Shown here piece after piece: positions 11,998 to 63,243 of a stretch of DNA of 64,000 bases. The position numbers and the translations under genes were made by a program. Position 1 is the first letter of the stretch. Every line of letters starts with the position of its first letter. The stretch covers positions 192,138,001 to 192,202,000 of the forward strand of contig NC_086101.1 in assembly GCF_963921235.1 (NCBI RefSeq). Reading direction: 5' to 3'. Below the pieces are notes generated by a model that saw only the letters and a program-made list of their open reading frames with translations, was not told where the DNA came from and ran no database searches. This DNA comes from Mobula hypostoma. Its lineage: Eukaryota.

Positions 11998-12387
11998 CTC
12001 CCGGCGAGAGTGTCTCTGTGATGACTGGAACCGAGGGAGCTTCAGCCACATTACCCTGTGAGTTCACACGGCCTCTGCAGAACCTCACCGCACACAGGGT
12101 GACGTGGATGAGGAAGGATCCCTACCGACACATCGTCACATTCAGGCGTTATGAAAATGGATCATGGGCAGCGGAAAACGGAGTGACTCAGTACGAGCTC
12201 GTCCGGGACCCAGAGCGGGGAAACGCCTTCTTCAGGATAAAGCAGCTGAGTGTGGAGGACAGTCACAGCTACCTGTGTCTGGCTGCGTTCAGGAAAATGA
12301 ACCATGATTATTCATCCAACAGAGACCGCGTCAAACCCCCATTTATCCATGTGTTCCAGAGTGAGATCCAGCTGCAGGTCAGACCAG
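11998..12387 (+). CDS. Ig V-set exon, copy 1 (Siglec-15-like / NKp30-like receptor ectodomain)
   Basis: Acceptor ccttccctcAG (11996-7) and donor GTAAGA (12388); 390 nt, phase 1-1, open; LPCEF...VTW...RIKQLSVEDSHSYLC gives the canonical C-W-C V-set pattern. Confidence 0.93.
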
Positions 12388-13337
12388 GTAAGAAACCATT
12401 GACACATTCTGCAGGGTATGGGGAGGGTTTTGGGAGTGCGGGGACGGGGGGAGAAGTGAAGCCTGCTACCATTATCCTTTCTCTAATCAACCCCCACTCC
12501 GGGTTTATCGTCTGCGCCCGAGTGAGATCTGACTGTAGTTCAGACCCGGAAAAGAACCTGTCGCCACATTCAAATTCAAGTTTAATTGTCAATCAGCCAC
12601 ACATGCATACAGCACAACAAAACAGAGTTTCTCCAGGGACAAGGTGTAAAGCAGAGTAGCAACAGCACACAGTACACATCGTTACGATAGCAGAAAAGCA
12701 TACAGTCACAAAAACACATAATATAGCCCAAGTTCCTGAGTGTTCTGGCTTGTAGCTTGATGGCAGATTGGATATTGTCCTGGTCCAGCTTGTCTCTCAC
12801 TAAGTGAACACTGGAGGGCAGCACTGAGCAACAGAGGAAGGCAGCACCAATGGGAGGGGCCTGCCCCCCACCCACTACGGACTCCAGCACGTCCACAGAG
12901 GCCTTTGCTCTCTCCCACAACATCTCGGCATCTTCTGCAGTGTTCAGGGATGGATCGGGATCTCCAGCACCCGTTGTATTATGTGTCCAGACGCCGGGAC
13001 TGAGTGTTATGTCAGCCACTCCCAGCCTCGGCTGGTGATGAGTTCCGTTTCCCCACCATATCTCCATCTCAGATGGTCCTTCACACAGGGTGGCCCCCAG
13101 ACCTTCAACGGGCCCCCGGTCGGGGCCTTGCCTGAGCCTGGGAGGAATGAGTGGATTCTAATGGAGGATCAGGAAGCTTCCCAGAGAAGACACACACTCA
13201 ACGTTTCAGGAAGAGCTTCTTCCTTTGTGCCGTCAGGTTTCTGAATGGACAGTCAGAAAGTGAGGACCAGCAACTTTGTCTCCTTTTTTCTCTCTTTTTT
13301 CACTACCTATTTAATGTAAAATTACACACGTAGGTAT

Positions 13338-16300
13338 ACAGAAACATGGAAAAAAACAGAAAAACTTACAGCACAATACAGACCCTCCAGCCCACAAAGC
13401 TGTGCTGAACATGTCCTTGCCTTAGAAATTACCTCAGGTTACCCATGGCCCTCTATTTTTCTAAGCTCCATGTACCCATCCAGGAGTCTCTTAAAAGACC
13501 CTATCGTTTCCAACACCACCACCGTCGCTGGGAGCCCATTCCACGCACTCACCATTCTCTGCATAAAAAACTTATCTCCAACATCTCCTCGGTTCCTACA
13601 ATGCTCCTTAAAAACTGTGCCCTCCCATGTTAGCCATTTCAGCCCTGGGAAAAAGTTTCTGACTATCCACACGATCAATGCCTCTCATCATCTTCAACAC
13701 CTCTATCAGGTCACCTCTCATCCTCCGTCGCTCCAAGGAGAAAAGGCCGAGTTCACTCAACCTTTTCTCATAAGGTATGCTCCCCAATCCAGGCAACATC
13801 TTTGTAAATCTCCTCTGCACCCTTTCTATAGTTTCCATATCCTTTCTGCAGTGAGGTGACCAGAAATGAGCACAGTACTCTAAGTGGGGTCTGACCTGAG
13901 TCCTATATAGTAGTAACATTACCTCTCGGCTCTTGAACTCAATCTTCATGGGGATCATTCTGGAATATAACATATAATCAGGATGTTAGTCGTAAGAGGA
14001 TCGTGCAGATTATAAATACCCTTTGTTACTAACTACAAAGTAATCCCATATTTAATAAGCCAATACACTGTATGTCTTCTTAACCACACAGTTCTCCTGT
14101 GCAGCAGCTTTGAGTGTCCTCTGGACTCGGACCCCAAGATCCCTCTGATCCTCCACATTGCCAAGAGTCTTACCATAAATACTATATCTTGCCATTATAT
14201 TTGACCTACCAAAATGAACCACCTCACAATTATCTAGGTTGAACTCCATATGTCACTTCTCAGCCCATTTTTGCATCCTATCAATGTCCCGTTGTAACCT
14301 CTAACAGCCCTCCACACTATCCACAACACCTCCAACCTTTGTGTCATCAGCAAATTTACGAACACATCCCCCCACTTCCTCATACCGGTCATTTTTAAAA
14401 ATCACGAAGAGTAAGGGTCCCAGAACAGATCCCTGAGGCACACCACTGGTCACCAACCTCCATGCAGAATATGACCTGTCTGCAACCACTCTTTACCTTC
14501 TGTGGCAAGCCAGTTCTGGAACCACAAAGCAATGTCCCCCTGGATTCCATGCCTCCTGACTTTCTCAATAAGCCTAGCATGGGGCACCTTATCAAATGCC
14601 TTGCTGAAATCCATACACACTATGTCTGCTGGTCTACCTTCATCAATGTGTTTAGTCACATCCTCAGAAAATTCAATCAGGCTCGTAAGGCATGACCTGC
14701 CTTTGACAAAGCCATGCTGACTATTCCTAACCATATTATGCCTCTCCAAATGTTCATAAATCCTGCCTCTCAGGATCTTCTCCATCAACTTTCCAACCAC
14801 TGAAGTAAGACTCACTGGTCTATAATTTCCTTTGCTATCTCTACTCCCTTTCGTGAATAAGGGAGCAACATCTGCAAACCTCCAGTCCTCTGGAATCTCT
14901 CCCATTTATAATGCAAAGATCATTGCCAGAGGCTCAGCAATCTCCTCTCTCGCCTCCCACAGAGCTGGGGGTATATCTCGTCTGGTCCCAGTGACTTATC
15001 CAATTTGATGCTTTCCAAAAGCTCCAGCACATTCCATTTCTTAATGTCTATATATTCAAGCTTTTCAGTCCGCCATAAGTCATCCCTACAATTGTCAAGG
15101 TCCTTTTTTGTAGCAACGTATTCATTGAGTATCTCTGCTATATCCTTTGGTTCCGTACATACTTTTCCACTGTCACACTTGATTGGTCCTATTCTCTCAT
15201 GTCTTATCCTCTTACTCTTCACATACTTGTAGAATGCCTTGCGATTGTCCTTAATCCTGCTCGCCAAGGCCTTCTCATGGCCCCTTCTGGCTCTCTTAAT
15301 TTCATTCCTAAACTGCTTCCTGATAGCCTTATAATCTTCTGGATCTCTATCATTGCCTAGTTTTTTGAACCTCTTGTAAGCTCTTCTTTTCTTCTTGAAC
15401 AGATTTTCTGCAGCCTTTGTACACGACGGTTCCTGTACCCTAGCATCCTTTCCCTGTCTCACTGGAGTACCTATGTAGAACGCCATGCAACTATCCCCCA
15501 AACATTTGCCAAATGTCTGCCATACATTTCCCTGAGAACATCTGCTCCCAATTTATACCTTCAAGTTCGACCTGATTGCTTCATATTTCCTCTTACTCCA
15601 ATTAAATATTTTCCCAACCTATCTGTTCCTACCCACTCTCCAATGCTATGGTAAAAGAGATAGAATTGTGATCACTATCTCCAAAATGCTCTCCCACTGA
15701 GAGATCTGACTCCTGACCAGGTTCATTTCCCAATACCAGATCAAGTACAGCCTCTCCTTTTGTAGGCTTATCTACATATTGTGTCAGAAAACCTTCCTGA
15801 ACACACCTAACAAACTCCACCCCATCTAAACCCCTTGCTCTTGGGAGTTGCCAATCAATATTTGGGAAATTAAAATCTCGCACCACGACAAACCTGTTAT
15901 TATTACACCTTTCCAGAATCTGTCTCCCTGTCTGCTCCTTGATGTCCCTGTTACTATTGGGTGGTCTATAAAAACTCCCAGTAGAATTATTGACCCCTTC
16001 CTGTTCCTAACTTCCACCCACAGAGACTCCGTAGACAATCCCTCCGTGTCTTCCTCTCTTTCTATGACGGTGATACTATCTCTGATCAACAGTGCCACAA
16101 CCCCACCTCTTTTGCCTCCCTCTCTGTCCTTTCTGAAACATCTAAAACCTAGCACTTTAAGCCATTCCTTCCCTGAGCCATCCAAGTCTCTGTAATGGCC
16201 ACAATATCATATCTCCAAGTACTCATTCACCCTCTAAGCTCATCGGCTTTGTTCATGATACTCTTTGCATTAAATAGACAGATCTCAAACCATTGGTCTG

Positions 16301-17267: not shown

Positions 17268-17387
17268 TGTAAGGGGTTTATTTTTTTTATGTCACTGCAT
17301 AGTCTAATTAAAATGGCTTCTTTGTTAAGTTATAATTGAAAGGGCTTCTTTGTTATGTTAACTGCTGAGACAGTCCTTCCGCTAACA

Positions 17388-19613
17388 ACACACATCAAAG
17401 TTGCTGGTGAACACAGCAGACCAGGCAGCATCTCTAGGAAGAGGTACAGTCGACGTTTCAGACCGAGACCCTTCGTCAGGACTAACTGAAGGAAGAGTGA
17501 GTAAGAGATTTGAAAGTTGGAGGGGGAGGGGGAGATCCAAAATGATAGGAGAAGACAGGAGGGGGAGGGATGGAGCCAAGAGCTGGACAGGTGATAGGCA
17601 AAAGGGATACGAGAGGATCATGGGACAGGAGGTCCAGGAAGAAAGACAAGCGGGGGGGGGGGAACCCAGAGGATGGGCAAGGGGTATATTCAGAGGGACA
17701 GAGGGAGAAAAAGGAGAGTGAGAGGAAGAATGTGTGTATAAAAATAAGTAACAGATGGGGTACGAGGGGGAGGTGGGGCATTAGCAGAAGTTAGAGAAGT
17801 CGATGTTCATGCCATCAGGTTGAAGGCTACCCAGACGGAATATAAGGTGTTGTTCCTCCAACCTGAGTGTGGCTTCATCTTTACAGTAGAGGAGGCCGTG
17901 GATAGACATGTCAGAATGGGAATGGGATGTGGAATTAAAATGTGTGGCCGCTGGGAGATCCTGCTTTCTCTGGCGGACAGAGCGTAGGTGTTCAGCAAAG
18001 CGGTCTCCCAGTTTGTGTCGGGTCTCGCCAATATATAAAAGGCCACATCGGGAGCACCGGACGCAGTATATCACCCCAGCCGACTCACAGGTGAAGTGTC
18101 GCCTCACCTGGAAGGACTGTTTGGGGCCCTGAATGGTGGTAAGGGAGGAAGTGTAAGGGCATGTGTAGCACTTGTTCCGCTTACACGGATAAGTGCCAGG
18201 AGGGAGATCAGTGGGGAGGGATGGGGGGGACGAATGGACAAGGGAGTCGCGTAGGAAGCGATCCCTGTGGAATGCAGAGAGAGGGGGGGAGGGAAAGATG
18301 TGCTTAGTGGTGGGATCCCGTTGGAGGTGGCGGAAGTTACGGAGAATAATATGTTGGACCCAGAGGCTGGTGGGGTGGTAGGTGAGGACCAGGGGAACCC
18401 TATTCCTAGTAGGGTGGCGGGAGGATGGAGTGAGAGCAGATGTATGTGAAATGGGGGAGATGCGTTTAAGAGCAGAGTTGATAGTGGAGGAAGGGAAGCC
18501 CATTTCTTTAAAAAAGGAGGACATCTCCCTCGTCCTAGAATGAAAAATCTCATCAGAGCAGATGCGGCAGAGACGGAGGAATTGTGAGTGGGGGATGGCG
18601 TTTTTGCAAGAGACAGGGACCCTCCACCTCCTTCCGCCACCTCCAACGGGATCTCACCACTAAGCACATCTTCTCCCCCCCCCACTCTCTGCTTTCCGCA
18701 GGGATCACTCCCTACGCGACTCCCTTGTCCATTCGTCCCCCCCCCATCCTCCCCCACCGATCTCCCTCCTGGCACTTACCCGTGTAAGCGGAACAAGTGC
18801 TACACATTCCCTTACACTTCCTCCCTTACCACCATTCAGGGCCCCAGACAGTCCTTCCAGGTGAGGCGACACTTCACCTGTGAGTCGGCTGGGGTTATAT
18901 ACTGTGTCTGGTGCTCCCGATGTGGCCTTTTATATATCGGCGAGACCCGATGCAGACTGGAAGAGTGCTTTGCTGAACACCTACGCTCTGTCCGCCAGAG
19001 AAAGCAGGATCTCCCAGTGGCCACACATTTCAATTCCACATCCCATTCCCATTCTGACATGTCTATCCATGGCCTCCTCTACCGTAAAGATGAAGCCACA
19101 CTCAGGTTGGACGAACAACACCATATATTCCATCGGGGTAGCCTCCAACCTGATGGCATGAACATCGACTTCTCTAACTCCCGCTAATGCCCCACCTCCC
19201 CCTCGTACCCCATCTGTTACTTATTTTTATACACACATTCTTTCTCTCACTCTCCTTTTTCTCCCTCTGTCCATCTGAATATACCCCTTGCCCATCCTCT
19301 GGGTCCCCACCCCCTCCTTGTCTTTCTCCCCGGACCTCCTGTCCCATGATCCTCTCGTATCCCTTTTGCCAATCACCTGTCCAGCTCTTGGCTCTATCCC
19401 TCCCCCTCCTGTCTTGTCCTATCATTTTGGATCTCTCCCTCCCCCTCCAACTTTCAAATCTCTTACTCACTCTTCCTTCAGTTAGTCCTGACAAAGGGTC
19501 TCGGCCTGAAACGTCAACTGTACCTCTTCCTAGAGATGCTGCCTGGCCTGCTGCATTCACCAGCAACTTTGATGTGTTGCTTGAATTTCCAGCATCTGCA
19601 GAATTCCTGTTGT
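17388..19613. mobile_element. Penelope-like element, two GIY-YIG-containing arms in inverted orientation
   Basis: GIY-YIG motif (VIYC..C..CGLLYIGET) in ORF 17781-18524 (-) and ORF 18588-19187 (+); 14-bp duplication TCCT(T/C)CCGCTAACA at 17374-17387 and 19614-19627, single in the second LTR. Confidence 0.93.
17448..17483 (-). ncRNA. Minimal type I hammerhead ribozyme motif
   Basis: Minus strand reads AGTC-CTGACGA-agggtctcggtct-GAAA-CGTC-GACT: intact core, stem I AGUC/GACU, palindromic ACGU helix III. Confidence 0.75.
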
Positions 19614-20209
19614 TCCTCCCGCTAACAGTTTGTTTAGATCACGTTACTGATAAGAAGATGTTATGAACCAATTGGGATAGTTGTTATGCTTTTGGTGTGT
19701 CTGTAAGATATTGTATGCGCGGGATTTTGGGGCAAAAGGCGAGAGAGACAGACAGAGGGTGGACCAGGTGTTGTGAGTCTGCTAATGGGGTCGGACCCCG
19801 AGCGGGGCATTTGGTGAGGAGAGGAGACGGAGACTGACTCGTGTGGAGCGTCTGGTCGACCGTTGTTGGTCCCAGGTGGCCGGTCAAGGTGGTTCGAGGG
19901 GTCGCAGGGTGAAGAAGAAGGGTCCTGAGCTCCAACTGTTTGTGCACGAGGAGATTGAACTTTGATTTATTTTCTTTTATTTTCTTTTTATATTTTATTC
20001 TCTATTAATTATATAGTTCCAGTAATATCTATAAACTGCAAATCATTTAATTGTATCTGGTGTATTGTCTGTTATTTGGGCGGGGTGGGGTACATCACAC
20101 AGCATCCACACAAACTAATTACCCAGTTTGGCGGGGCCGAGGGCTGTTTCCCTAGACGACAGCGAGCTGAGCGACCCTTAGGCTGGTCGGGAGGAGGGGG
20201 GCTACATTG

Positions 20210-20227
20210 TGGGGGCTCGTCCGGGAT
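20210..20227 (+). promoter_or_regulatory. Primer-binding site complementary to the 3' end of tRNA-Pro
   Basis: TGGGGGCTCGTCCGGGAT begins 4 nt after the LTR end; identical to the MLV-type tRNA-Pro PBS as I recall it. Confidence 0.9.
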
Positions 20228-20289
20228 TGGTTCTACTGGTATGCTGTGTGGTTGCCCTGTTTAAATCCGTAATGTGTGTTTCTGTGGGT

Positions 20290-21155
20290 TATTTGCTGGT
20301 TATTGCTGCATGCATGTTGGGTGAGGTCTTTGTTCGAGTTCAGACTAGCATCGACGAGTTGGAGGTGGCACTAGGGGCTGTCCATGCTGTTGGGAGAGAG
20401 AGGAAAGAGTGGTCTGATTTGGAGGTAGTGTCTGCGAATAAATGTTCTAGCTCTGGCAGGCTCCATCTGGCGTTTGGGATAGTGTCCACCCCAAGAGGGG
20501 CGGAGACGTGTGAGATGTGGGCGGAGCGGATCTCTCAGTTGTTAGATGAGTGGCAGTGCTCAGTTGAGGGACAGCGACAGGGATTGATTGAAAGTTTGAG
20601 TAGGCGGGCTGGTGATGGTGTTACTGTCAGGTTCACTTACACCGTGGTGACAGCTGTCAGTTACTTGAAAGAGGGGGGAATGTTTTCAGTGTGTCTTCTC
20701 TGGCTGGGAGGGTGGCTAAATTGCCTGCAGTACCAGGGGGATCATTTCTGGGGATCAGCCCCTCCCTCAGTTGTTCAGCTGCTCAGAGAGGTGTCGGGAA
20801 ACTTAGTGGAGGCCCAGTGGGGGAGCGGCTTGGGGTCCCTGAGGAAACACGTTCCCAGCAATGTATCGATGAACTTCCGAAAGGAAAGGACCCTATTCCT
20901 GAAGGCTTAGAGGGACCACGTCCCAGGGTGTCGTTACGGATAGAGGGAAGCGATGCTAAAGCCATCCTCGACCCCGGGGCGCAGGTCATGTTGTTGTACA
21001 GTTCATTTTACAACCGGTGTCTGAAGCATTTACCCTTGACAACTGCAAGGGCACTGGAGATTTGGGGTACCAGTGCCAGTAGTTATCCAGAAGACGATGA
21101 TTGGTTAATGACCCTGGAGTTCATGGGGGCATTGTCTGGGCACCCAGCGTGTTGA
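20290..21155 (+). pseudogene. Decayed PNMA-like gag and aspartic protease of the Gypsy element
   Basis: [15 protein letters not shown]...RQGLIESL (capsid-like); VSLRIEGSDAKAILDPGAQVMLLYSSFY (D-T-G replaced by D-P-G). Confidence 0.8.
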
Positions 21156-21384
21156 GTTGCTTCTGAGGACGTGTGTAGCAGCCTTGAGCCGGTACCGAAT
21201 TTAAGCGAGACCCAGCGGTGGTACGGCCTGGGGAAAGGAGCTGAGGGTGAGACCCTCTTAGTAGATGCTCCGAACTACCACAAGGGAGGGGAGTTGACCG
21301 CTGAAGACACCTCAGTGAGAGAGAGGTCACGGCAACTGGACTCTAGCGGTGTGGAAGATGAAGGCAGTGTGTGTGTGGATTATG

Positions 21385-21900
21385 CGATGTGGTTTAATGT
21401 GCTGGATCTGAGGAGTGGATGCTGCTGTTGTGTGCTGGGGCAGCAGGCTGAGGGTAGCAGACACCAACAGAATCAAGAAACTCATTCGTAGGACCAGTGA
21501 TGTTGTGGGGATGGAACTGGACTCTCTGATGGTGGTGTCTGAAAAGAGGATGCGGTCCAAGTTGCATGCCATCTTGGACAATGTCTCCCATCCACTACAT
21601 AATGGACTGGCTGGGCACAGGAGTACATTCAGCCAGAGACTCATTCCACCGAGATGCAACACAAGAGTGTCATAGGAAGTCATTCCTGCCTGTGGCCATC
21701 AAACTTTACAACTCCTCCCTTGGAGGGTCAGACACCCTGAGCCAATAGGCTGGTCCTGGACTTATTTCCTGGCATAATTTACATATTAGTATTTAACTAT
21801 TTATGGTTTTATTACTATTTAATTATTTAAGGTGCAACTGTAACAAAAACCAATTTCCCCGGGATTAATAATGTATGACTATGACTACTATGACCACTAT
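21385..21900 (+). mobile_element. Rex1/L2-clade LINE 3' fragment with (ATGACT)n tail, inside the Gypsy element
   Basis: SHPLH...RSTFSQRLIPPRC...RKSFLPVAIKLYN C-terminus; the same family appears in reverse at about 49965-50225. Confidence 0.75.
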
Positions 21901-21959
21901 ACCAGATCCCGAGGAGTGCGGCTGTTGAGCTAAAGACAGCTGTTATTAGTTCCCTAGGA

Positions 21960-22085
21960 TTCTTCCGATCCGAAAAGATGCCCAAGGGCATATCCGGAGC
22001 CCCTGCATCCTTTCCGCGGGGCATGAAGAAGACCATGGGGGAAGTGAAGGTGTGTGGAGTTTTGGCGTATGTGGATGACTGCCTA
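21960..22085 (+). pseudogene. Gypsy reverse-transcriptase fragment ending just after YVDD
   Basis: Translates ...KMPKGISGAPASF...MKKTMGEVKVCGVLAYVDD. Confidence 0.8.
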
Positions 22086-22187
22086 GAGCTTGGATTCGCC
22101 TGGGGGGACTATGAGGCAAGGCGAGTGGCTGAGCCTGGGCGACAGAAGTGAAGTGTCAAATGTGGAGGAGTTTTTGGCCAGAGGAGT

Positions 22188-23222
22188 TTGGTGCAATGTG
22201 AGAAAATTGACCCGACACACCAGTTGAACTTCCTGGTGTTGGAACAGACGATGGTGGACCTGGGGATGGAAACCCAGGTCGTCAATCTGAATGAGACACA
22301 GGGGAGAGAGGGGATTTGCACCACTGAACTGAGTGCTCAGAAATGCCGGCCGGAGACTGAGTGCCGCACGTGTGGGTCGACCATTGCAGACTTGGAATTC
22401 ACGCTCATCAACGTGGAGAAGGAGCAACGGAATTCCAAGCCAACACTGTGGTCATGTACTGATGAATTAATCCAGCCAGAAGAAACAATGACCCACCTTC
22501 GAAGGGATCAGCAGAAACTCAAGACGTCGATCCAGAAAAGATTGGAAGATTTACAAGTTGGGGAAGATCAAGGAAGTGTTCTGACTCAGGCCAACAGAAA
22601 ACCGAGAGCCCAGGGAGGGGAGTATGACTACACTCCCGAGGAGGTGAAGAAGTGGAGGACAGATCTCAGAAAAGGGAGGCGGACGCTTGAAAGGAACTTG
22701 AAAACAACTTTCGACAGTTCAAATGAAGTGGAAAAACTGGAAGTTGACCTGGAAGACAACATCAGGAAGAAACAACCGGAGGCTGACCACCCTTTAACTG
22801 CTGCTTTTCAGGTCAGGGTGGAAGAAGCTGGTGGGGTAACTGCGTCCCAGATTGAGATGGCCAGGAACCCTGAGTCAGAACGGCTGAGGCTGTGGCGAGA
22901 GTTGAAGGAGTCCCTGAAGAAGCTGACGTCTCGACTGCAGGAGGTTGAAGGGGTAGCCCCGGCTAAATGTTTCAGTTTGGAGAAACTCAAACAGCAGCTA
23001 CCGAGCGAGGGAATGAGGAAGAATACGGATTCGAAGGATGATGTGCTTGACATGTGGTACATGCTGCCTTTCACTAACTTCCCCGTCATTGAGGAAGAGA
23101 CCCTTGGCCCTTCTCCCACTGAGTCAGGTGTAGTGGGGAGGGCTAGCTGTGGGCAGTCTGAGTTATGGCAGGACCAGGAAGGAAAAGAAGCGGGGCCCCG
23201 AACGCAGGACAGGGGGCTCTGA
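22188..23222 (+). CDS. 344-codon ORF in the Gypsy element, derived from the myosin-II heavy-chain rod (S2/hinge), intron-less
   Basis: Motifs IADLEFTLINVEKE, LEDLQVGED, KKWRTDL..GRRTLERNLK and EEAGGVTASQIEM parallel sarcomeric MYH IDDLELTLAKVEKE, LDDLQAEED, KKVRMDL..AKRKLEGDLK and EEAGGATSVQIEM (recalled). The start is TTG; the first ATG is at codon 22. Translation is unproven. Confidence 0.8.
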   Translation: MVQCEKIDPTHQLNFLVLEQTMVDLGMETQVVNLNETQGREGICTTELSAQKCRPETECRTCGSTIADLEFTLINVEKEQRNSKPTLWSCTDELIQPEETMTHLRRDQQKLKTSIQKRLEDLQVGEDQGSVLTQANRKPRAQGGEYDYTPEEVKKWRTDLRKGRRTLERNLKTTFDSSNEVEKLEVDLEDNIRKKQPEADHPLTAAFQVRVEEAGGVTASQIEMARNPESERLRLWRELKESLKKLTSRLQEVEGVAPAKCFSLEKLKQQLPSEGMRKNTDSKDDVLDMWYMLPFTNFPVIEEETLGPSPTESGVVGRASCGQSELWQDQEGKEAGPRTQDRGL

Positions 23223-24103
23223 GTTGTAATGGTGGCCTGAGTGAGAGGGGAGTTGGCAAGTAGGCCCAAGGTATCCCTAGTAGTGTCTGAGCCTTTAGGG
23301 TTTAGGTGAGGGGGTACGGAGGACTCAGAGGATTAGGAAGCTCTCAGATAGGTTGGCCTATGTAGCGCCCGTGGACGGGAGGAAGGTCCACTGTTTGGGG
23401 AGCAATGTCACTGTGTGTATCTGGATGGGTTTCTGTGTCTGTAGGACTGGTTGGCGAGTTACTTAGAAGTCATGAGGACATGACTTTATTTGGTGGGGGG
23501 AGATTGTAAGGGTTTTTTTTTACGTCACTGTGTAATCTAATTAAAATGGATTCTTTGTTATGTTAACTGCTGAGAAAGTCCTCCCGCTAGCAGTGTGTTT
23601 GGATCACGTTACTGTTAAGAAGATGTTATAAACCAATAGGGATAGTTGTTATGCTTTTGGTGTGTCTGTAAGATATTGTATGCGCGGGGTTTTGGGGAAA
23701 ATGGCGAGAGAAAGAGACAGAGGATGGACCAGGTGCTGTGAGTCTGCTAACGGGGTTGGACCCCAAGCGGGGCATTCGGCAAGGGGAGGAGATGGAGACG
23801 GACTCATGTGGAGCATCTGGTCGACCACCGTTGTTGGTCCCAGGCAGTCTTTCGAGGTGGTCTGAGGGGCAGGGTGAAGAAGAAGGGTCCTGAGCTCCAA
23901 CTGTTTGTGCACGAAGAGATTGAACTTTGATAAGTGTGGCGCCTTTTATTTTCCTTTTATATTTTATTCTCTGTTAATTATATAGTTCCAGTAATATCTA
24001 TAAACTGTAAATCATTTAATTGTATCTGGTGTATTGTCTGTTATTTGGGTGGGGTGAGGTACATCACACAGCATCCACACAAACTAATTACCCGGTTTGG
24101 CGG

Positions 24104-24447
24104 GGCCACGTTACCCTGTGAGTTCACACGGCCTCCGCAGAGCCTCACCGCACACAGGGTGACGTGGATGAGGAAGGATCCCTACCGACACATCGTCACA
24201 TTCATGCGTTATGAACATGGATCGTGGGCAGCGGAAAACGGAGTGACTCGGTACGAGCTCGTCCGGGACTCAGAGCGAGGAAACGCCTCGATCAGGATAA
24301 AGCAGCTGAGTGTGGAGGACAGTCACAGCTACCTGTGTCTGGCTGAGTTCAGGAAAATGAACCATGATTATTCATCCTATGGAGACCACGTCAAACCCCC
24401 ATTTATCCATGTGTTCCAGAGTGAGATCCAGCTGCAGGTCAGACCAG
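24104..24447 (+). pseudogene. Ig V-set exon, copy 2, 5'-truncated and fused to the Gypsy 3' LTR
   Basis: Begins at ATLPCEF; the native acceptor and first ~15 codons are missing; both cysteines and the donor GTAAGA (24448) are retained. Confidence 0.88.
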
Positions 24448-25454
24448 GTAAGAAATCATTGACCCATTCTGCAGGGTATGGGGAGGATTTGGGAGTGCGG
24501 GGGCGGGGGGAGAAGTGAAGCCTGCTACCATTATCCTTTCTCTAATCAACCCCAACCCCAGGTTTATTGTCTGTGCCCGAGTGAGATCTGACTGTAGATC
24601 AGACCTGGAAAAGAACCTGTCGCCACATTCAAATTCAAGTTTAATTGTCAATCAGCCACACATGCATACAGCACAACCAAACACTGTTTCTCCAGGGACA
24701 AGGTGTAAAGCAGAGTAGCAACAGCACACAGTACACATCGTTACGATAGCAGAAAAGCATACAGTCACAAAAACACATAATATAGCCCAAGTTCCTGAGT
24801 GTTCTGGCTTGTAGCTTGATGGCAGATTGGATATTGTCCTGGTCCAGCTTGTCTCTCACTAAGTGAACACTGGAGGGCAGCACTGAGCAACAGAGGAAGG
24901 CATCACCAATGGGAGGGGCCTGTCCCCCACCCACTACGGACTCCAGCACGTCCACGGAGGCCTTTGCTCTCTCCCACACCGTCTCGGCATCTTCTGCAGT
25001 GTTCAGGGATGGGTCGGGATCTCCAGCACCCGTTGTATTATGTGTCCAGACTCTGGGACTGAGTGTTATGTTGGCCACTCCCAGCCTCGGCTGGTGATGA
25101 GTTCCGTTTCCCCACCACATCTCCATCTCAGACGGTCCTTCACACAGGGTGGCCCCCAGACCTTCAACGGGCCCCCGGTCGGGGCCTTGCCTGAGCCTGG
25201 GAGGAATGAGTGGATTCTAACGGAGGATCAGGAAGCTTCCCAGAGAAGACACACACCCAATGTTTCAGGAAGAGCTTCTTCCTTTCTGCCGTCAGGTTTC
25301 TGAATGGACAGTCAGAAAATGGAGGACCAGCTCACTTTTTCTCCTTTTTTTCTCTCTTTTTGTGCTACTTATTTAATTTAAAATTATACATGTGGATATA
25401 TATTTCTTACTGTAATTTACGGTTTTTTTATAAATATGTATTGCAATGTATAAC

Positions 25455-29700: not shown

Positions 29701-30109
29701 TACTTACTAGTGTTGTTACACTGTATTTTGTGTTGTTACATTCCAGTGATTAGTGCTGTTACACTGTACTTACTAGTGTTGTTACACTGTATTTTGTGTT
29801 GTTACATTCTAGTGATTAGTTCTGTTACACAGTACTGCTTAATGTTGTTACCTCTCCGGACTAGTTGTTGCACTGATCTGACTGGTGTTTTAATTCTGTA
29901 CTGATTATTCTTGTTACACTGTACTGCTTAGTGTTATTACACTGTCACCATTAGTGTAGTTACACTGTTGGGATTCATTTTGTTACACTGTTGTGATTTT
30001 TGGTGTAACAGTGTACTGACTAGTTACACAGTACTGACCAGTGTTTTTAAACTGCAGTGATTAGTGTTGTTACACTATTCCGATTATTGCCGTGATACTC
30101 TACTGATTC

Positions 30110-30330: not shown

Positions 30331-30354
30331 TCTGCTGATTAGTGTTGTTACACT

Positions 30355-31364: not shown

Positions 31365-31754
31365 CTCCCGGCGAGAGTGTCTCTGTGATGACTGGAACCG
31401 AGGGAGCTTCGGCCACGTTACCCTGTGAGTTCACACGGTCTCCGCAGAGCCTCACCGCACACACGGTGACGTGGATGAGGAAGGATCCCTACCGACACAT
31501 CGTCACATTCAGGCGTTATGAAAATGGATCGTGGGCAGCGGAAAACGGAGTGACTCGGTACGAGCTCGTCCGGGACCCAGAGCGGGGAAACGCTTTCATC
31601 AGGATAAAGCAGCTGAGTATGAATGACAGTCACAGCTACCTGTGTCTGGCTGCCTTCAGGAAAAAGAGCCATAATTATTCATCCTACAGAGACCACGTCA
31701 AACCCCCATTTATCCATGTGTTCCAGAGTGAGATCCAGCTGCAGGTCAGACCAG
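31365..31754 (+). CDS. Ig V-set exon, copy 3
   Basis: Acceptor ccttccctcAG (31363-4) and donor GTAAGA (31755); 390 nt, phase 1-1, open; 19 nt differences from copy 1 by manual count. Confidence 0.93.
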
Positions 31755-43198: not shown

Positions 43199-43285
43199 CA
43201 AACTCCAACTCTCACATTTATGTGCTGCTCGTTCTGGTTCCCCTGTTCCTGGTCTGTGTCCTTGCAGCCTCCTGGAAGAAGAAAG
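43199..43285 (+). CDS. Transmembrane exon of the Ig-V receptor
   Basis: Acceptor ctctctgtctcacAG and donor GTGAGC; 87 nt, phase 1-1; ANSNSHIYVLLVLVPLFLVCVLAASWKKK (hydrophobic span plus basic stop-transfer); not in the ORF track. Confidence 0.88.
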
Positions 43286-44100: not shown

Positions 44101-44140
44101 TTCACCTCTGGCTGATGGGTCGCATCAGAGGTACTAAAAG
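44101..44140 (+). CDS. Cytoplasmic exon 1 (VHLWLMGRIRGTK-R)
   Basis: Strong acceptor tctttttatttctttAG and donor AAG|GTAAGG; 40 nt, phase 1 to 2, in frame with the TM exon. Confidence 0.75.
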
Positions 44141-53605: not shown

Positions 53606-53660
53606 TTTCACGTCACATGCCGGTGATAATAAACCTGATTCTGATTCTGATTCCGATACA

Positions 53661-54805: not shown

Positions 54806-54858
54806 GAATGTTCCACGTTTGACCCAATCGGAGCAGGAACAGAAGCCGCCTGAGTCAG
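54806..54858 (+). CDS. Cytoplasmic exon 2 (R-NVPRLTQSEQEQKPPES-V)
   Basis: Acceptor ttggttcttttctcgacAG and donor CAG|GTACTG; 53 nt, phase 2 to 1, bridging 44140 and 63190 exactly; lies in a non-repeat island. Confidence 0.7.
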
Positions 54859-55604
54859 GTACTGAGCTGACAACGCGAGGGGGTGAACCAGTCACGGCTC
54901 CCAGGGGACCGATCAATAACAAATCTAGAACAGGCAGGGAGCTCCACCACCTGAGGAAAGAGCAGACCAGCTTCAGATTCCATGGAACGTAGAACAGTAC
55001 CGCACAGAACAGGCCCTTCAGCCCACCATGTTGTGCTAACCCTTCAATCTACTCTGAGATCAATCCAACTTTTCCCTCCCAGACAGCCCCCCAATTTTCT
55101 ATCCTCCATGTGCCTATCTAAGAGTCTCTTCAATGTCCGCTACGTATCTGCCTCTACCACCAGCCCTGGCAGCATATTCCATGCACCCACCACTCTCTGT
55201 GTAAGAATCCCTTCTCAGACATTCACCCCAATATATTTCCCCAATCACATTAAAAGTATGCCCCTCGTATTAGCCATTTCCACCTCTGGCTGACCACTCA
55301 ATCTTATCATCTCGTACACCTCAATCAAGTCACCTCTCATCCTCCTTCACTCCAAAGAGAAAAGCCTGAAAATGCTCAACCAATCCTCATAAGACATGCT
55401 CTCCAATCCAGGCAGCATCCTGGTAAATCTCCTCTGCACCCTCTCTAAAGCTTCCACATCCTTCCTACAACGAGGCAACCAGAACTGAACACATTTCTCC
55501 AAGTGTGGTCTAACCAGGGTTTTATAGAGCTGTAACACTGCCTCACAGGTCTTGAACTCAGTCCTTCGACTAATGAAGCCAAAACACCATATGCCTTCTT
55601 AACA

Positions 55605-58600
55605 ACTTTCAGGGGTTATTTGTGTAGAGTTCTGCATAGATACATTCCAATGAGACAGGGAAAGGATGGTCGGGTACAGGAACGGTGGTGTACAAAGGCT
55701 GTTGTAAATCCAGTCAAGAAGAAAAGAAAAGCTTACAAAAGGTTCAAAAAACTAGGCAATGATAGAGATCTTGAAGACTATAAGGCTAACAGGAAGGAGC
55801 TTAAGAATGAAATTAGGAGAGCCAGAAGGGGCCATGAAAAGGCCTTGGCGGGCAGGATTAAGGAAAACCCCAAGGCATTCTACAAGTATGTGAAGAGCAA
55901 GAGGATAGGACGTGAGAGAATAGGACCAATCAAGTGTGACAGTGATAAAGTGTGTATGGAAGCAGAGGAGATAGCAAAGGTACTTAATAGAACATAGAAT
56001 ATAAAATAGTACAGCACAGTACAGGCCCTTCGGCCCATATTGTTGTGCCGACCCTCAAACCCAGCCTCCTAAATAGCCCCGCACCTTAAATTCCTCCATA
56101 TACCCATCTAGTAGTCTCTTAAATTTCACTAGTGTATCTGCCTCCACCACTGACTCAGGCAGTGTATTCCATACACCAACCAGTCTCTGAGTAAAAAACC
56201 TTCCTCTAATATCCCCCTTGAACTTCCCACCCTTTACCTAAAAGCCATGTCCTCTTGTATTGAGCAGTGGTGCCCTGGGGAAGAGGCGCTGGATATCCAC
56301 TCTATCTATTCCTCTTAATATCTTGTGCACCTCTATCATGTCTCCTCTCATCCTCCTTCTCTCCAAAGAGTAAAGCCCTAGCTCCCTTACTCCTCTGTAC
56401 CCTTTCCAGTGCTTCCACATCTTTCCTATAGTGAAGCGACCAGAACTGGACACAGTACTCTAAGTGTTGCCTAACCAGAGTTTTATAGAGCTGCATCATT
56501 ACATCGCAACTCTTAAATTCTATCCCTCGATTTATGAAAGCTAACACCCCATAAGCTTTCTTAACTACCCTATCTACCTGCGAGGCAACTTTCAGGGATC
56601 TATGGACATGTACCCCCAGATCCCTCTGCTCCTCCACACTACCAAGTATCCTGCCATTTACTTTGTGCTCTGCCTTGGAGTTTGTCCTTCCAAAGTGTAC
56701 CACCTTACACTTCTCCGGGTTGAACTCCATCTGCCACTTCTCAGCCCACTTCTGCAACCTATCAATGTCTCTCTGCAATCTTTGACAATCCTATACACTA
56801 TCTACAACACCTCCAACCTTTGTGTCGTCTGCAAACATCCCAACCCACCCTTTTACCCCCACATCCAGGTCATTAATAAAAATCACGAAAAGTAGAGGTC
56901 CCAGAACAGATCCTTGTGGGACACCACTAGTCACATCCCCCCAATCCAAATGTACCCCCTCCACTATGACCCTCTGCCTTCAGCAGGCAGGCCAATTCTG
57001 AATCCAGCTGGCCAAACTTCCCTGGATCCCATGCCCTCTGACTTTCTGAATAAACCTACTGTGTGGAACCCTGTCAAATGCCTTACTAAAATCCATAGAG
57101 ATCACATCCACTGCACTACCCTCATCTATATGCCTGGTCACTTCCTCAAAGAACTCTATCAGGCTTGTTAGACATGATCTGCCCTTCACAAAGCCATACT
57201 GACTGTCCCTGATCAGACCATGATTCTCTAAATGCCCATAGATCCTATCTCTAAGAATCTTTTCCAACAGCTTTCCTACCACAGACGTAAGACTCACTGG
57301 TCTATAATTACCAGGACTACCCCTACTACCTTTTTTGAACAAGGGGACAACATTTGCCTTCCTCCAATCTTCCAGTGCCATTCCCGTGGACAACGAGGAC
57401 ATAAAGATCCTAGCCAGAGGCTCAGCAATCTCTTCTCTCGCCTCATGGAGCAGCCTGGGGAATATTCCGTCAGGCCCCGGGGACTTATCTATCGTAATGT
57501 ATTTTAACAACTCCAATACCTCCTCTCCCTTAATATCAACATGCTCCAGAACATCAACCTCACTCATATTGTCCTCACCATCATCAAGTTCCCTCTCATT
57601 GGTGAATACCGAAGAGAAGTATTCATTGAGGACCTCACTCACTTCCACAGCCTCCAGGCACATCTTCCCACCTTTATCTCGAATCGGTCCAACCTTCACT
57701 CCTGTTATCCTTTTTTTCTTCACATAATTGAAGAATGCCTTGTGGTTTTCCTTTACCCTACTCGCCAAGCCCTTCTCATGCCTCCTTCTTGCTCTTCTCA
57801 GCCCCTTCTTAAGCTCCTTTCTTGCTTCCCTATATTCCTCAATAGACCCATCTGATCCTTGCTTCCTAAACCTCATGTATGCTGCCTTCTTCCACCTGAT
57901 TAGATTTTCCATCTCACTTGTCACCCATGCTTCCTTCACCCTACCGTTCGTTATCTTCCTCACCGGGACAAATTTATCCCTAACATCCTGCAAGAGATCT
58001 CTAAACATCGACCACATGTCCATAGTACATTTCCCTGCAAAAACATCATCCCAATTCACACCCGCAAGTTCTAGCCTTATAGCCTCATAATTTGCCTTTC
58101 CCCAATTAAAAATTTTCCTGTCCTCTCTGAGTCCATCCTTTTCCATGATAATGCTAAAGGCCAGGGAGCGGTAGTCACTGTCCCCCAGATGCTCACCCAC
58201 TGAGACTACTTAATGAGTACTTTGCTTCAGTATTCACTACGGAAAATGATCTTGGCAATTGTAGGGATGACTTACAATGGACTGAAAAGCTTGAGGATAT
58301 AGACATTAAGAAAGAGGATGTGCTGGAGCTTTTGGAAAGCATCAAGTTGAATAAGTCACCAGGACTGTACGAGATGTACCCCAGGCTACTGTAGAAAGCG
58401 AGGGAGGAGATTGCTTAGCTTCTGGTGATCTTCGCATCATCAATGGAGATGGGAGAGGTTCCGGAGGATTGGAGGGTTGCGGCAGTTGTTCCCTTATTCA
58501 AGAAAGAGAGTAGAAATAGCCCAGGAAATTGTAGTCTAGTGAGTCTTACCTGAGTGGTTGGTAAGTTGATGGAGAAGATCCTGAGAGGCAGGATTTATGA

Positions 58601-59885
58601 ACATTTGGAGAGGAATAGTCAGCATGGCTCTGTCAAAGGCAGGTCATGCCTTATGAGTTTGTCTGAATTTTTTGAGTTTCTGACTAAACACATTGATGAA
58701 GGTAGAGCAGTAGATGTAGTGTATATGGATTTCAGCAAGGCATTTGACAAGGTACCCCATGAAAGGCTTATTGAGAAAGTAAGGAGGCATGGGATCCAAG
58801 GGGATATTGCTTTGTGGATCCAGAATTGGCTTGCCCACAGAAGGCAAAGAGCGAATGTAGACGGGTCATATTCTGCATGGAGGTCGGTGACCAGTCATGT
58901 GCCTCATGGATCTGTACAGGGTCCCTTACTCCTTCATTTTTATAAATGACCTGGATGAGGAAGTGGAGGGATGGGTTAGTAAATTTGCTGATGACACAAA
59001 GGTTGGTGGTGTTGTGGATAGTGTAGAGGGCTATCAAGGTTTACAGCGGAACATTGATAGGATGCAAAACTGGGCTGAGGAGTGGCAGATGGAGTTCAAC
59101 CCAGGTAAGTGTGAGATGGTTCATTTTGGTAGGTCAAATATGATGGCAGAATATTATATTAATGCTAAGACTCTTGGCAGTGTGGAGGATAAGAGGGATC
59201 TTGGGGTCCGAGTTCATAAGACACTCAAAGCTGCTACGCAGATTGACCCTGTGGTTAAGAAGGCATATGGTGCATTGGCCTTCATCAATTGTGGGATTGA
59301 GTTTAGGAGCTGAGAGATAATGTTGCAGCTGTATCGGACCCTGATCAGACCCCACTTGGAGTACTGTGCTCAGTTCTGGTCGCCTCACTACAGGAAGGAT
59401 GTGGAAAGTATAGAGAGAAGGCAGAGGAGATTTACAAGGATGTTGCCTGCATTGGGGAGCATGCTTATGAGAATAGGTTGAGTGAACTCGGCCTTTTCTC
59501 CTTGGAGCAACTGAGGGTGAGAAGTGACCAGATAGACGTGTATAAGACAATGAGAGGCATTGATCGTGTGGATAGTCAGAGGCTTTTTCCCAGGGCTGAA
59601 ATGGCTAACATGAGAGAGCACAGTTTTAAGGTGCTTGGAAGTAGGTACAGAGGAGATGTCAGGGGTAAGTTTTTTATGCAGAGAGTGGTGTAGAATGGGC
59701 TGCCAGCGATGGTGGTGGAGGTGGATACAATAGGGTCTTTTAAGAGATTCCTAGATAGGTACATGGAGCTTAGAAAAATAGTGGGCTATGGGTAACCCGA
59801 AATAATTTCTAAAGTAAAGACGTTTGGCACAGCTTTGTGGGCCGAAGGGCCTGTATTGTGCTATAGAGTTTCTATGTTTCTAACT
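55605..59885 (+). mobile_element. Decayed CR1 ORF2 and tail, split by another CR1
   Basis: ORF 55620-55997 continues at 58207 (LNEYFASVF...); RT pieces 58554-59693. Confidence 0.88.
55989..58206 (-). mobile_element. 5'-truncated CR1 of the same subfamily as 569-4794
   Basis: 8-bp TSD TACTTAAT at 55981-55988 and 58207-58214; ORFs 56980-58200 and 56302-56778 are almost identical in protein to 2841-4724. Confidence 0.93.
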
Positions 59886-62095: not shown

Positions 62096-63189
62096 AATTC
62101 AATGAAGGACTCTCGTGAAGGCAACAATCAGCAAGTACAGGTGCACAAGAAACCGAGAAGCCCAGCGCTCTACGGCTCCCCTCAGGAGTCTGCAGGACAT
62201 ATGTCGGTCGTGTTGCCATTCTGGGTCTTGGGAGGAGATTACCACTGACCAGGCACTCATCTGGACTGGTTATGTAAGCAGCAAGCAAGCCAGAGGCTGG
62301 GTCTCTGGGAGGGAGCAGCCCACCTCCTGATACCCCATGGCATTTCCACCTCTGCAAGGCACAAGGCATTGGCCGAGCCATACTTGGAGTATTGTCAGCA
62401 GTTTTGGACCCCATATTTAAGGAAGCGTGTGCGAGCATTGGAGAAGGTGCAGAGATTACAGGGTGAAGGCAGGGGAATAGGGTTGAGAGGGAGAATAAAT
62501 CAGCCATGATGGAATGGCGGAGCAGAGAGTATGGTCTACTGTGTGTACTTCAGTTTCTCACCCATAAATCCACAGGGAGAACCTGTTCCCTTCTGAACCA
62601 AGATGCATGGTGTGAAAATGCTGGCCAGGAGTTACAAGGGGAAGGGTGAGGATTGTTTCAACCCTAAATCTGTAGTAACAAAGGCATTCGGAGAAGTATT
62701 GGATTGGCAGGAGATAACGTCCAGGACCATGGGATAAGAGAAAGATCAATGGGCTGATAGGATTGTCCTCCTGAGAGCTAGTATGGATTTGATAGGCTGA
62801 ATCTCCTGCTGTATGCTATCAGTGCTGCCCTCCAGTGTTCACTCGATGAAGACAAGTGGGATTGCATTGGTCTGCAGCTGCACTGGTGCACTAGCGTGAG
62901 ATGAGGAACTGCTACATGCTTATTCTTACAGAAACATGGCTCCAGGACAACATCCCATGCAACAGCAGTCTTCAGGCTATGACACTGAGGGACGTATGCT
63001 GATATTATTTTGTGACTGTATGGTTTTCTTTGCTATTGTAACAACAGTATATGTGCGGTGTGTGACTGTTGATGACTGTCTTTAATACATTGGCCCTGAG
63101 GAAAGCTGTTTCATTAGGCTGTGTACATGCGTATGGTTGAATGACAATTAAACTTGTGCTTGAGCTTCATTCTCTGATTTGTGTTACAG

Positions 63190-63243
63190 TGCACGACAGC
63201 AGCCCGTTGTACGACAACATCATCCCGAGCAGCAACAACAAAG
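63190..63243 (+). CDS. Cytoplasmic exon 3 with a tyrosine motif (VHDSSPLYDNIIPSSNNK)
   Basis: Acceptor ttctctgatttgtgttacAG and donor AAG|GTAAAC; 54 nt, phase 1-1, open. Confidence 0.75.

What the first reader, a model, noticed from the sequence alone, without database searches (positions are those of the whole stretch)
11998..63243. Receptor gene with several V-domain cassette exons upstream of one TM/cytoplasmic constant region
Seen: three V exon copies, then a single TM exon and three cytoplasmic exons. Their splice phases chain without a stop (1-1, 1-1, 1-2, 2-1, 1-1): ...QLQVRP-ANSNSHIYVLLVLVPLFLVCVLAASWKKK-VHLWLMGRIRGTK-RNVPRLTQSEQEQKPPES-VHDSSPLYDNIIPSSNNK. I found no leader, TM or tail exon between the V copies, so they do not look like separate complete genes. 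Inference: the symmetric V exons can be used singly or in tandem, giving isoforms with different binding domains on one signalling tail. This would be a small variable-to-constant splicing system in an immune-type receptor. The short constant exons are not annotated in the ORF track.
Basis: partly seen in the sequence, partly recalled or inferred. Interest (0 to 1): 0.8.

Follow-up and report, generated by a model that had tools for sequence, protein, structure and literature searches.

The report
Ray Siglec-15-like gene, duplicated V exons
The window holds the middle of one roughly 100-kb inhibitory Siglec-15-like immune receptor gene of the devil ray Mobula hypostoma, in which the exon for the second, membrane-near V-type domain has been copied four times; this is ordinary exon duplication in an expanding receptor family, with no evidence of a variable-to-constant splicing system.

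Summary
The exons are real. V1 (11998-12387) and V3 (31365-31754) are intact phase 1-1 V-set exons. The middle copy, V2 (24105-24447), has lost its acceptor and first 16 codons where it abuts an LTR-like repeat. The chain V3-TM-cyt1-cyt2-cyt3 is identical to RefSeq XP_062905821.1 (LOC134347359), and ray orthologues carry the same chain.

The gene starts upstream of the window: leader at about -32 kb, a Siglec-15-type N-terminal V domain (D1) at -5.4 kb, and a fourth V copy (V0) at -3.3 kb. More tail exons follow to about +70 kb. The duplicated V is therefore the membrane-proximal second domain, not the N-terminal lectin domain. Two paralogues carry a single copy. Shark and stingray gene models place two or three such domains in tandem.

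In RNA-like runs of this species V3 is transcribed. V1-specific words are absent. Contig boundaries suggest a V-to-V3 junction, as in the RefSeq model.

The one-gene reading holds. Regulated choice of binding domains is unsupported. The scan has already met this family elsewhere on this chromosome. Interest is modest.

The parts
11998..12387 (+). V1: intact copy of the D2-type V-set exon (390 nt, phase 1-1)
   Evidence: Pfam V-set at E 4e-12. Canonical AG/GT borders identical to those of V3. Not detectable in RNA-like runs: it holds 0.16-0.26 of the sampled words, about what it shares with V3 (0.24).
11641..13339 (+). Duplication unit around V1 (exon plus flanking intron)
   Evidence: Self-BLAST: 11641-12559 matches 31009-31925 at 94.7% and 12046-13339 matches 24105-25400 at 95.1%.
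19614..24107 (+). LTR-flanked retroelement-like insert (direct repeats 19614-20138 and 23579-24107, about 90% identical) that abuts and truncates V2
   Evidence: One internal ORF gives a weak PNMA/gag-like Pfam hit at E 1.3e-4, below the curated cut-off. In-frame AG sites lie at 23986 and 23992.
24105..24447 (+). V2: 5'-truncated copy of the V exon (no acceptor, first 16 codons missing, donor intact, frame open)
   Evidence: Alignment, frame. RefSeq XP_062905821.1 starts at the internal Met at 24168 and joins V2 to V3.
31365..31754 (+). V3: intact copy of the V exon and the one that is transcribed
   Evidence: Pfam V-set at E 5e-15. 100% match to XP_062905821.1. RNA-like run X3 holds 0.76 of its words. 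A 298-nt contig differs from V3 at 2 letters and from every other copy at 16 or more. Depth is confined to the exon.
43199..43285 (+). Transmembrane exon (ANSNSHIYVLLVLVPLFLVCVLAASWKKK), uncharged, phase 1-1
   Evidence: The genome holds three copies at 97-100% identity, one per inhibitory paralogue.
44101..44140 (+). Cytoplasmic exon 1 (VHLWLMGRIRGTK.), phase 1-2
   Evidence: Conserved in M. birostris, H. akajei and H. sabinus models.
54806..54858 (+). Cytoplasmic exon 2 (.NVPRLTQSEQEQKPPES), phase 2-1
63190..63243 (+). Cytoplasmic exon 3 (VHDSSPLYDNIIPSSNNK), phase 1-1; it has a near copy at 66132-66185, outside the window

Best explanation
The window is the central part of one gene of about 100 kb, Mobula hypostoma LOC134347359, on chromosome piece C12 at about 192.106-192.21 Mb. 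It encodes an inhibitory-type member of a Siglec-15-derived receptor family of sharks and rays.

Exon order (shown): leader (window -32 kb); D1, a Siglec-15-like V-set domain that keeps the CRVE arginine (-5.4 kb); then four tandem copies of the exon for the second, membrane-proximal V-set domain D2 (V0 at -3.3 kb, V1, V2, V3); one uncharged TM exon; and at least seven mini-exons for a tyrosine-motif tail, including a VIYAAV ITIM beyond the window.

Origin (shown): the V copies are duplicates of a unit of about 1.7 kb (exon plus flanks), 93-96% identical. Transposon insertions later spread them apart. V2 lost its 5' end next to an LTR-like element.

Function (inferred): D1 is the glycan-binding head and D2 is a stalk or accessory domain. 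The duplication therefore changes the number of D2 domains rather than offering alternative binding heads.

Usage in the available RNA (part shown, part inferred): V3 is transcribed and joined to the TM exon. A V-type exon, most simply the V2 remnant as in RefSeq, appears to be spliced in front of V3. V1 is silent. Whether full-length leader-D1-V0-(V1)-V3 mRNAs exist is untested.
For: Genome and gene identity: contig length 199,023,498 equals the M. hypostoma record. P0045 (XP_062905821.1) maps at 100% to V2(part), V3, TM, cyt1-3 and downstream exons.

Upstream half: D1 and V0 were found by tblastn at window -5.4 kb and -3.3 kb, with splice sites. The leader (MLSLRVCLCTVLLSVSVRGY, donor A|GTAGGT, phase 1) came from a degenerate pattern search. 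That search gives exactly one leader for each of the three inhibitory paralogues and three more in the activating part of the cluster.

No TM of either type, no D1 and no leader lie between V0 and V3.

Family assignment: D1 matches the human Siglec-15 structure 7zoz at E 2.9e-18, with AVLPCTFTHP and Y.CRVE aligned. D2 is V-set by Pfam, and its nearest solved relative is pIgR D1.

Paralogues A and C have one D1, one D2 and one TM each.

Tandem D2 in single polypeptide models: two in H. akajei and three in H. perlo. D2 copies cluster by lineage, so the duplication is recurrent, or the copies evolve in concert.

RNA: runs X3, X5 and X8 show depth on the exon and none in the flanking intron. X3 holds 0.76 of V3's words but 0.26 of V1's, about the 0.24 that V1 shares with V3. 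One contig starts 29 letters (k-2 if Logan's k is 31, the length of the indexed words) before the V3 acceptor with a CAG match, and D1 ends in GAG. Another ends one letter past the V donor. This is the pattern expected from a branch between V-to-V (CT...) and V-to-TM (CA...) junctions.
Against: No read or contig was seen that links leader/D1/V0 to V1, V3 or the TM, so continuity of the two halves rests on gene anatomy alone.

The letters of the loose end at the V3 acceptor were not displayed. The V-to-V3 junction is inferred from contig boundaries, and the donor exon could be V2, V1, V0, or V3 itself by back-splicing.

Contigs of V2 type are nearly absent in X3: one 62-nt piece at depth 4.4, equally compatible with V1. 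That fits poorly with a stoichiometric V2-V3 mRNA.

The runs are only guessed to be RNA and their tissues are unknown, so V1 may be used elsewhere.

dN/dS among the copies is about 1 overall, which does not separate live exons from dead ones.

The RefSeq product lacks a signal peptide, so the transcribed form may be defective.
Confidence: 0.7

Rival explanations
1. One reading: the symmetric V exons are regulated alternative cassettes, used singly or in combination, so that one signalling tail is paired with different diversified V domains.
For: V0, V1 and V3 have identical strong splice sites and phase 1-1, so any combination stays in frame. Their amino-acid differences cluster in the BC, DE and FG (CDR-like) loops. 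For V0/V1/V3 the pN/pS ratio is 3.1 in the loops and 0.15 in the framework, with equal pS. The partition was partly chosen after seeing the data, so this contrast is inflated.
Against: V1-specific words are absent from all four RNA-like runs of the species. The isoforms looked up in related species do not differ by a whole V cassette. The multi-V models include the domains in tandem. The domain is not the N-terminal lectin domain. The loop variants are shared with other paralogues, as gene conversion or inherited family diversity would give.
Confidence: 0.1
2. Only V3 is a working exon. The functional mRNA is leader-D1-V3-TM-tail, as in the single-D2 paralogues, and V0, V1 and V2 are young, still-open relics that are skipped.
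For: V3 is the only copy fully covered in RNA-like run X3. The V3-to-TM distance (11.5 kb) resembles that of paralogue C (13 kb). The truncated V2 also keeps an open frame, so an open frame is not evidence of use.
Against: V0 sits 1.7 kb behind D1 with the same acceptor as V3, so skipping it would need explanation. The one contig that crosses a V3-like acceptor begins with CAG (the end of a V-type exon), not GAG (the end of D1). No D1-to-V3 junction was identified.
Confidence: 0.25
3. The gene is decaying. The transcripts seen start in or near the LTR-like element beside V2 and run V2(part)-V3-TM-tail. They encode a leaderless product. The upstream half (leader-D1-V0-V1) is no longer joined to the tail.
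For: The RefSeq model starts at an internal Met of V2 and has no signal peptide. The LTR-like repeat lies in the sense orientation directly upstream of V2. V1 is absent from RNA while V3 is present. In this gene cyt4 has Ser where relatives have the Tyr of the TYANI motif.
Against: The leader, D1, V0, V1, V3, TM and tail exons are all open with canonical splice sites. V2-type contigs are scarce in the same run. No transcription start was mapped.
Confidence: 0.2
4. The V-to-V3 junction comes from a single-exon circular RNA: the V3 donor is back-spliced to the V3 acceptor, and no second V is involved.
For: In X3 the contigs on the V exon form a closed path (end of V, then start of V3, body of V3, end of V). 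Only V3's body is fully covered. The last 41 nt of all gene-B copies are identical.
Against: This rests purely on contig ends. A 62-nt piece of V2/V1 type does exist in the same run. The library type is unknown.
Confidence: 0.1

Closest known systems
Siglec-15 (human SIGLEC15; structure 7zoz)
   Same: The gene's N-terminal domain D1, upstream of the window, is a clear homologue of the Siglec-15 V-set. The paralogue P0004 matches it at E 2.9e-18, with the AVLPCTFTHP and Y.CRVE arginine motifs aligned, and D1 of this gene keeps them. Activating paralogues in the same cluster have a Lys in the TM (LCIPLGLKTLALLVMG) and a short tail. Human Siglec-15 likewise has TM Lys274, which pairs with DAP12 (PMC6941304).
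   Different: The second domain is V-set here, not the C2-type domain of Siglec-15. This gene has an uncharged TM and a long tyrosine-motif tail with an ITIM in place of the Lys/DAP12 design. The family is a multigene cluster of at least 6 leaders and 14 D2 exons. D2 is present in four exon copies.
CD33-related Siglecs and other paired activating/inhibitory IgSF receptors (KIR, LILR, SIRP, PILR)
   Same: The cluster holds near-identical ectodomains joined either to a charged TM with a short tail or to an uncharged TM with an ITIM tail. It shows rapid lineage-specific duplication and loop-focused variation. The number of Ig domains varies between members.
   Different: There is no sequence orthology to these mammalian families. 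The ITIM partner here derives from Siglec-15, which is described as signalling through DAP12 (PMC6941304).
Tandem Ig-domain exon duplication within IgSF genes (for example sialoadhesin, CD22, pIgR; from general knowledge)
   Same: Phase 1-1 Ig exons are duplicated in place and can be included in series. RefSeq models of relatives contain two (H. akajei) or three (H. perlo) D2 domains.
   Different: Here one copy is broken, the copies are 7-15 kb apart in transposon-filled introns, and inclusion of V0 and V1 is unproven.
Arrays of alternative exons such as insect Dscam1 (from general knowledge)
   Same: Both show an array of similar Ig exons upstream of constant exons.
   Different: There is no evidence of mutually exclusive choice. 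Only three or four copies exist. No isoform set is known, and V1 is not seen in RNA. The resemblance is superficial.

Membership tests
Immunoglobulin V-set domain | Profile match above the curated threshold, with the Cys...Trp...Y.C core | tested here: met
   PF07686 at E 4e-12 for V1 and 5e-15 for V3, with 46.7 and 56.1 bits against a cut-off of 26. LPCEF, VTWMRK and YLCLA are present.
Siglec-15 family | N-terminal V-set homologous to Siglec-15, with the conserved arginine of the F strand (CRVE) | tested here: met
   D1 of this gene (window -5384..-5001, outside the window) reads ...GRYWCRVELNID. The paralogue P0004 aligns to 7zoz at E 2.9e-18 across this motif. The V exons inside the window are not this domain.
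Siglec-15 family | Second domain of C2 type (two Ig-like domains in all) | tested here: not met
   The second domain scores as V-set and only weakly for other Ig models. It is present in four exon copies.
Siglec-15 family | Lysine in the TM helix for DAP12 pairing (PMC6941304) | tested here: not met
   The TM of this gene, IYVLLVLVPLFLVCVLAAS, has no charged residue. Activating paralogues do have the Lys.
Siglec-15 family | Binding of sialylated glycans | not testable with these tools
   Inferred only from the conserved arginine motif.
ITIM-bearing inhibitory receptors | Cytoplasmic (S/I/V/L)xYxx(I/V/L) motif | tested here: met
   AEVIYAAVVKK in XP_062905821.1 and its orthologues. That exon lies beyond the window. 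The in-window tail carries only a YDNI motif.
ITIM-bearing inhibitory receptors | Recruitment of SHP-1/SHP-2 and inhibition of signalling | not testable with these tools
   No assay is available here.
Alternative-cassette (variable-to-constant) splicing system | Different mRNAs that use different members of the exon array | tested here: inconclusive
   V3 is transcribed and V1 is not detected. There is one RefSeq isoform only. Contigs cannot show absence, and the tissues are unknown.
Alternative-cassette (variable-to-constant) splicing system | All array members are complete, spliceable exons | tested here: not met
   V2 lacks its acceptor and 16 codons. V0, V1 and V3 are complete.

The most novel reading that the evidence does not exclude
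The diversified D2 V-set exons (V0, V1, V3, and perhaps V2 rescued by an in-frame acceptor in the LTR-like repeat at 23986 or 23992) are included in different numbers or combinations in different cells. This would give an inhibitory Siglec-15-derived receptor a variable accessory binding surface or a variable stalk length. The loop-focused amino-acid variation would then reflect selection on D2 as a second recognition site.
Probability: 0.12. Interest if true: 0.55.

Novelty: new member of a known kind. Interest (0 to 1): 0.3.

Why it matters
It links two halves that were read separately. The leader-D1-V0 stretch just upstream and the V1-V3-TM-tail stretch in this window form one inhibitory receptor gene, and this corrects a leaderless RefSeq model. 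It also documents a shark-and-ray family in which Siglec-15, described in mammals as a DAP12-coupled receptor, has become a cluster of paired activating and inhibitory receptors. In that family the second domain is V-type and its exon duplicates repeatedly. For comparative immunology this gives a concrete, testable locus for asking how Ig-domain number evolves. It is not a new mechanism of receptor diversification.

Tried and rejected
- Separate genes per V. Rejected: no leader, D1 or TM of either type lies between the copies.
- Leader within 15-17 kb upstream of D1. Motif and tblastn searches failed. A degenerate DNA pattern then found it 26.7 kb upstream of D1.
- dN/dS as a test of live against dead exons. 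The ratio is about 1 for all pairs and is uninformative. The loop/framework split looks striking, but the partition was partly chosen after seeing the data, and the variants are shared among paralogues.
- The open frame as evidence of use. Rejected, because the truncated V2 is open too.
- Looking up the RefSeq product in the contig index for neighbouring gene models: not on record.
- RNA runs: no run is on record as RNA for either exon. The single read-laying run did not print the loose end at the V3 acceptor, so the partner exon had to be inferred from contig ends.
- Literature: three full-text searches found no paper on this family in cartilaginous fish.
- Word search of earlier scan notes: empty.
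Full report
WHAT IS THERE

The window is G000:C12:192138001-192202000. The contig length (199,023,498) equals that of the Mobula hypostoma record that carries the best-matching RefSeq proteins.

Three stretches of the + strand encode the same V-set Ig domain.
- V1 (11998-12387) and V3 (31365-31754) are 390 nt each and open. They share the acceptor tccttccctcag|CTCCCGG and the donor CAG|gtaaga, and are phase 1-1.
- Both hit Pfam V-set, at E 4e-12 and 5e-15.
- In V2, homology begins only at 24105. The acceptor and the first 16 codons are replaced by an LTR-like repeat (23579-24107). A second copy of that repeat lies at 19614-20138, about 90% identical, with 3.4 kb between them. The missing 5' part of V2 is nowhere else in the window.
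- Each V lies in a duplicated unit of about 1.7 kb, 94-95% identical between units. LINE, hAT, Penelope-like and LTR-like sequences fill the space between units.

THE CONSTANT EXONS

TM (43199-43285), cyt1 (44101-44140), cyt2 (54806-54858) and cyt3 (63190-63243) all have AG/GT borders.

They are not new. RefSeq XP_062905821.1 (LOC134347359, 494 aa, P0045) maps at 100% identity onto:
- V2 from the internal Met at 24168,
- V3, TM, cyt1, cyt2 and cyt3,
- a near copy of cyt3 at 66132-66185,
- further exons at 69801 and 69965.

M. birostris P0009 and P0010, H. akajei P0002 and H. sabinus P0046 carry the same TM and tail chain. The mini-exons are therefore conserved coding exons.

THE REST OF THE GENE

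Family members read leader - D1 - D2 - TM. The V of this finding is D2.
- tblastn places a single D1 exon at window -5384..-5001 and a fourth intact D2 copy, V0, at -3285..-2896.
- A degenerate pattern for the leader peptide finds six exact sites in the genome, all in this cluster. One lies at window -32068..-32008 (MLSLRVCLCTVLLSVSVRGY, donor A|GTAGGT, phase 1). One lies upstream of each of the two inhibitory paralogues, and three lie in the activating part of the cluster.
- Between V0 and V3 there is no leader, no D1 and no TM of either family type.
- The upstream half has no TM and the downstream half has no leader. I read them as one gene of about 102 kb: L - D1 - V0 - V1 - V2(truncated) - V3 - TM - tail.
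- Paralogue A (- strand, 191.93-192.00 Mb) and paralogue C (+ strand, 192.25-192.29 Mb) have one D1, one D2 and one TM each.

WHAT FAMILY

D1 is homologous to the V-set of human Siglec-15. The paralogue P0004 matches 7zoz at E 2.9e-18, with AVLPCTFTHP and Y.CRVE aligned. D1 of this gene reads GRYWCRVEL.

Siglec-15 has two Ig-like domains and a TM lysine (Lys274) that pairs with DAP12 (PMC6941304). In this family:
- D2 is V-set, and its nearest solved relative is pIgR D1.
- There are two tail types. One has a Lys-containing TM with a short tail (LCIPLGLKTLALLVMG...). The other, present in this gene, has an uncharged TM followed by a long tail with YDNI, TYASI and a VIYAAV ITIM.

This is the layout of paired activating and inhibitory receptors. 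Relatives are predicted in many sharks and rays. I found no paper that describes them. Earlier notes of this scan reached the same family reading on other parts of the chromosome.

TANDEM D2 ELSEWHERE

H. akajei models P0001-P0003 contain two D2 domains in series, and Heptranchias perlo P0058 contains three. On a tree the D2 copies group by lineage: H. perlo 100/100, stingrays 84/97, Mobula unresolved. D2 duplication is therefore recurrent, or the copies evolve in concert. The isoforms of those genes that I looked up differ by 12-18 residues, not by a whole domain. A second tandem set of three D2 exons lies at 190.903-190.907 Mb in this genome.

EXPRESSION

No run is on record as RNA. Four small runs of organism B behave like RNA: three of the four (X3, X5, X8) show depth on the exon and none in the adjacent intron, and X7 adds only one low-identity contig there. 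Organism B is the species whose DNA runs hold 0.81-0.86 of V3's words.
- X3 holds 0.76 of V3's words. It holds only 0.26 of V1's words, and V1 shares 0.24 of its 31-mers with V3.
- The other three runs hold 0.16-0.21 of V1's words. V1 is therefore not present as a transcribed exon in these samples.
- A 298-nt X3 contig differs from V3 at 2 letters and from every other genomic copy at 16 or more. V3 is transcribed.
- One X3 contig (115 nt) covers 31362-31450 and runs on for 26 unlike letters upstream. Its match begins with CAG, the end of V-type exons, whereas D1 ends in GAG. In all it holds 29 letters of the upstream exon, which is k-2 if Logan's k is 31, the length of the indexed words.
- Another contig ends one letter past the V donor, and that letter is not the intron's G.
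- Both boundaries are what a de Bruijn graph gives if the shared V 3' end is followed by C and then branches into T (V exon, CTCCCGG) and A (TM exon, CAAACTCC).

I take this as indirect evidence for both a V-to-V3 and a V-to-TM junction, as in the RefSeq model. The loose letters were not printed. The last 41 nt of V0, V1, V2 and V3 are identical. Contigs of V2 type are nearly absent in X3: one 62-nt piece at depth 4.4, equally compatible with V1. The donor exon is therefore undetermined, and a V3 back-splice cannot be excluded.

SELECTION

Pairwise dN/dS among V0, V1, V2, V3 and the paralogues is 0.8-1.6 for all pairs but one (2.3). Exon identity (93-96%) is close to that of the flanking intron (87-97%). 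The truncated V2 is also open, so an open frame says nothing about use.

Amino-acid differences among V0, V1 and V3 concentrate in the BC, DE and FG loops. pN/pS is 3.1 in the loops and 0.15 in the framework, at equal pS. I drew the partition partly after seeing the data, and the variants recur in other paralogues. This may be inherited family diversity or gene conversion rather than selection on these particular copies.

VERDICT

The reading that this is one gene and not several is right. The reading that it is a variable-to-constant splicing system offering different binding domains is not supported:
- The duplicated domain is the membrane-proximal one.
- The lectin domain is single.
- V1 is silent in the available RNA.
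- Relatives include such copies in series.

The best description is recent tandem duplication of the D2 exon in an inhibitory Siglec-15-derived receptor gene, with partial decay at V2. Usage of V0 and V1 is still to be measured.

Noticed in passing
window 17400-19600: Two copies of a GIY-YIG-containing ORF lie head to head as an inverted repeat (17781-18524 on the - strand, 18588-19187 on the + strand). Pfam GIY-YIG hits at E 1e-4. This looks like a pair of Penelope-like retroelement remnants directly upstream of the 5' LTR-like repeat.
   Followed up: partly
window 19614-24107: LTR-flanked element in the same orientation as the gene. One internal ORF has a weak PNMA/gag-like hit (E 1.3e-4, below the cut-off). 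ORF 22188-23222 has no Pfam hit.
   Followed up: partly
window 23986 and 23992: Two AG sites inside the LTR-like repeat lie in phase 1 and are open into V2 (tatatag|TT and ttccag|TA). They could in principle let the truncated V2 be spliced in frame, with 38-40 repeat-derived residues in place of its first strand. There is no RNA evidence.
   Followed up: partly
window 28711-31077 (short version at 11589-11712): A 23-nt minisatellite (GTTACACTGTACTGATTAGTGTT, about 80 copies) lies directly upstream of the V3 unit, and a few copies lie upstream of V1. It marks the 5' edge of the duplicated unit and may have mediated the duplication.
   Followed up: no
window 43435-43990: A G-rich tandem repeat with units of 45-58 nt fills most of the 815-nt intron between the TM exon and cyt1.
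   Followed up: no
beyond the window: 66132-66185, 68974-69051, 69801-69881: The tail is built from duplicated mini-exons (cyt3 and cyt3'; cyt4 and cyt5). In this gene cyt4 has Ser where relatives have the Tyr of the TYANI motif, and the RefSeq model skips it. The last 140 residues of the RefSeq protein (after ...VVKKH) match an exon at about 81645 and look like a wrong extension.
   Followed up: partly
G000:C12:190903097, 190905047, 190907008 (+ strand; L005, L008, L012): A second array of three D2-type V exons at 2-kb spacing lies in the activating part of the cluster. The L008 copy has Tyr in place of the first Cys (LPYEF).
   Followed up: no
run X7, contig laid at window 31638-32213: A 617-nt contig of a paralogue (92% alike) runs from the V exon through the donor into the intron. 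This matches RefSeq models such as P0007 that end by reading through the D2 donor, which would give a possible soluble form of the receptors.
   Followed up: no
window 840-8957, 35100-42591, 55600-59700: Several LINE copies (endonuclease plus reverse transcriptase; Pfam RVT_1 at E 1e-13 to 1e-32) lie in both orientations, and a hAT transposase C-terminus lies at 10463-11002 (-). Most of the introns are transposon sequence.
   Followed up: partly
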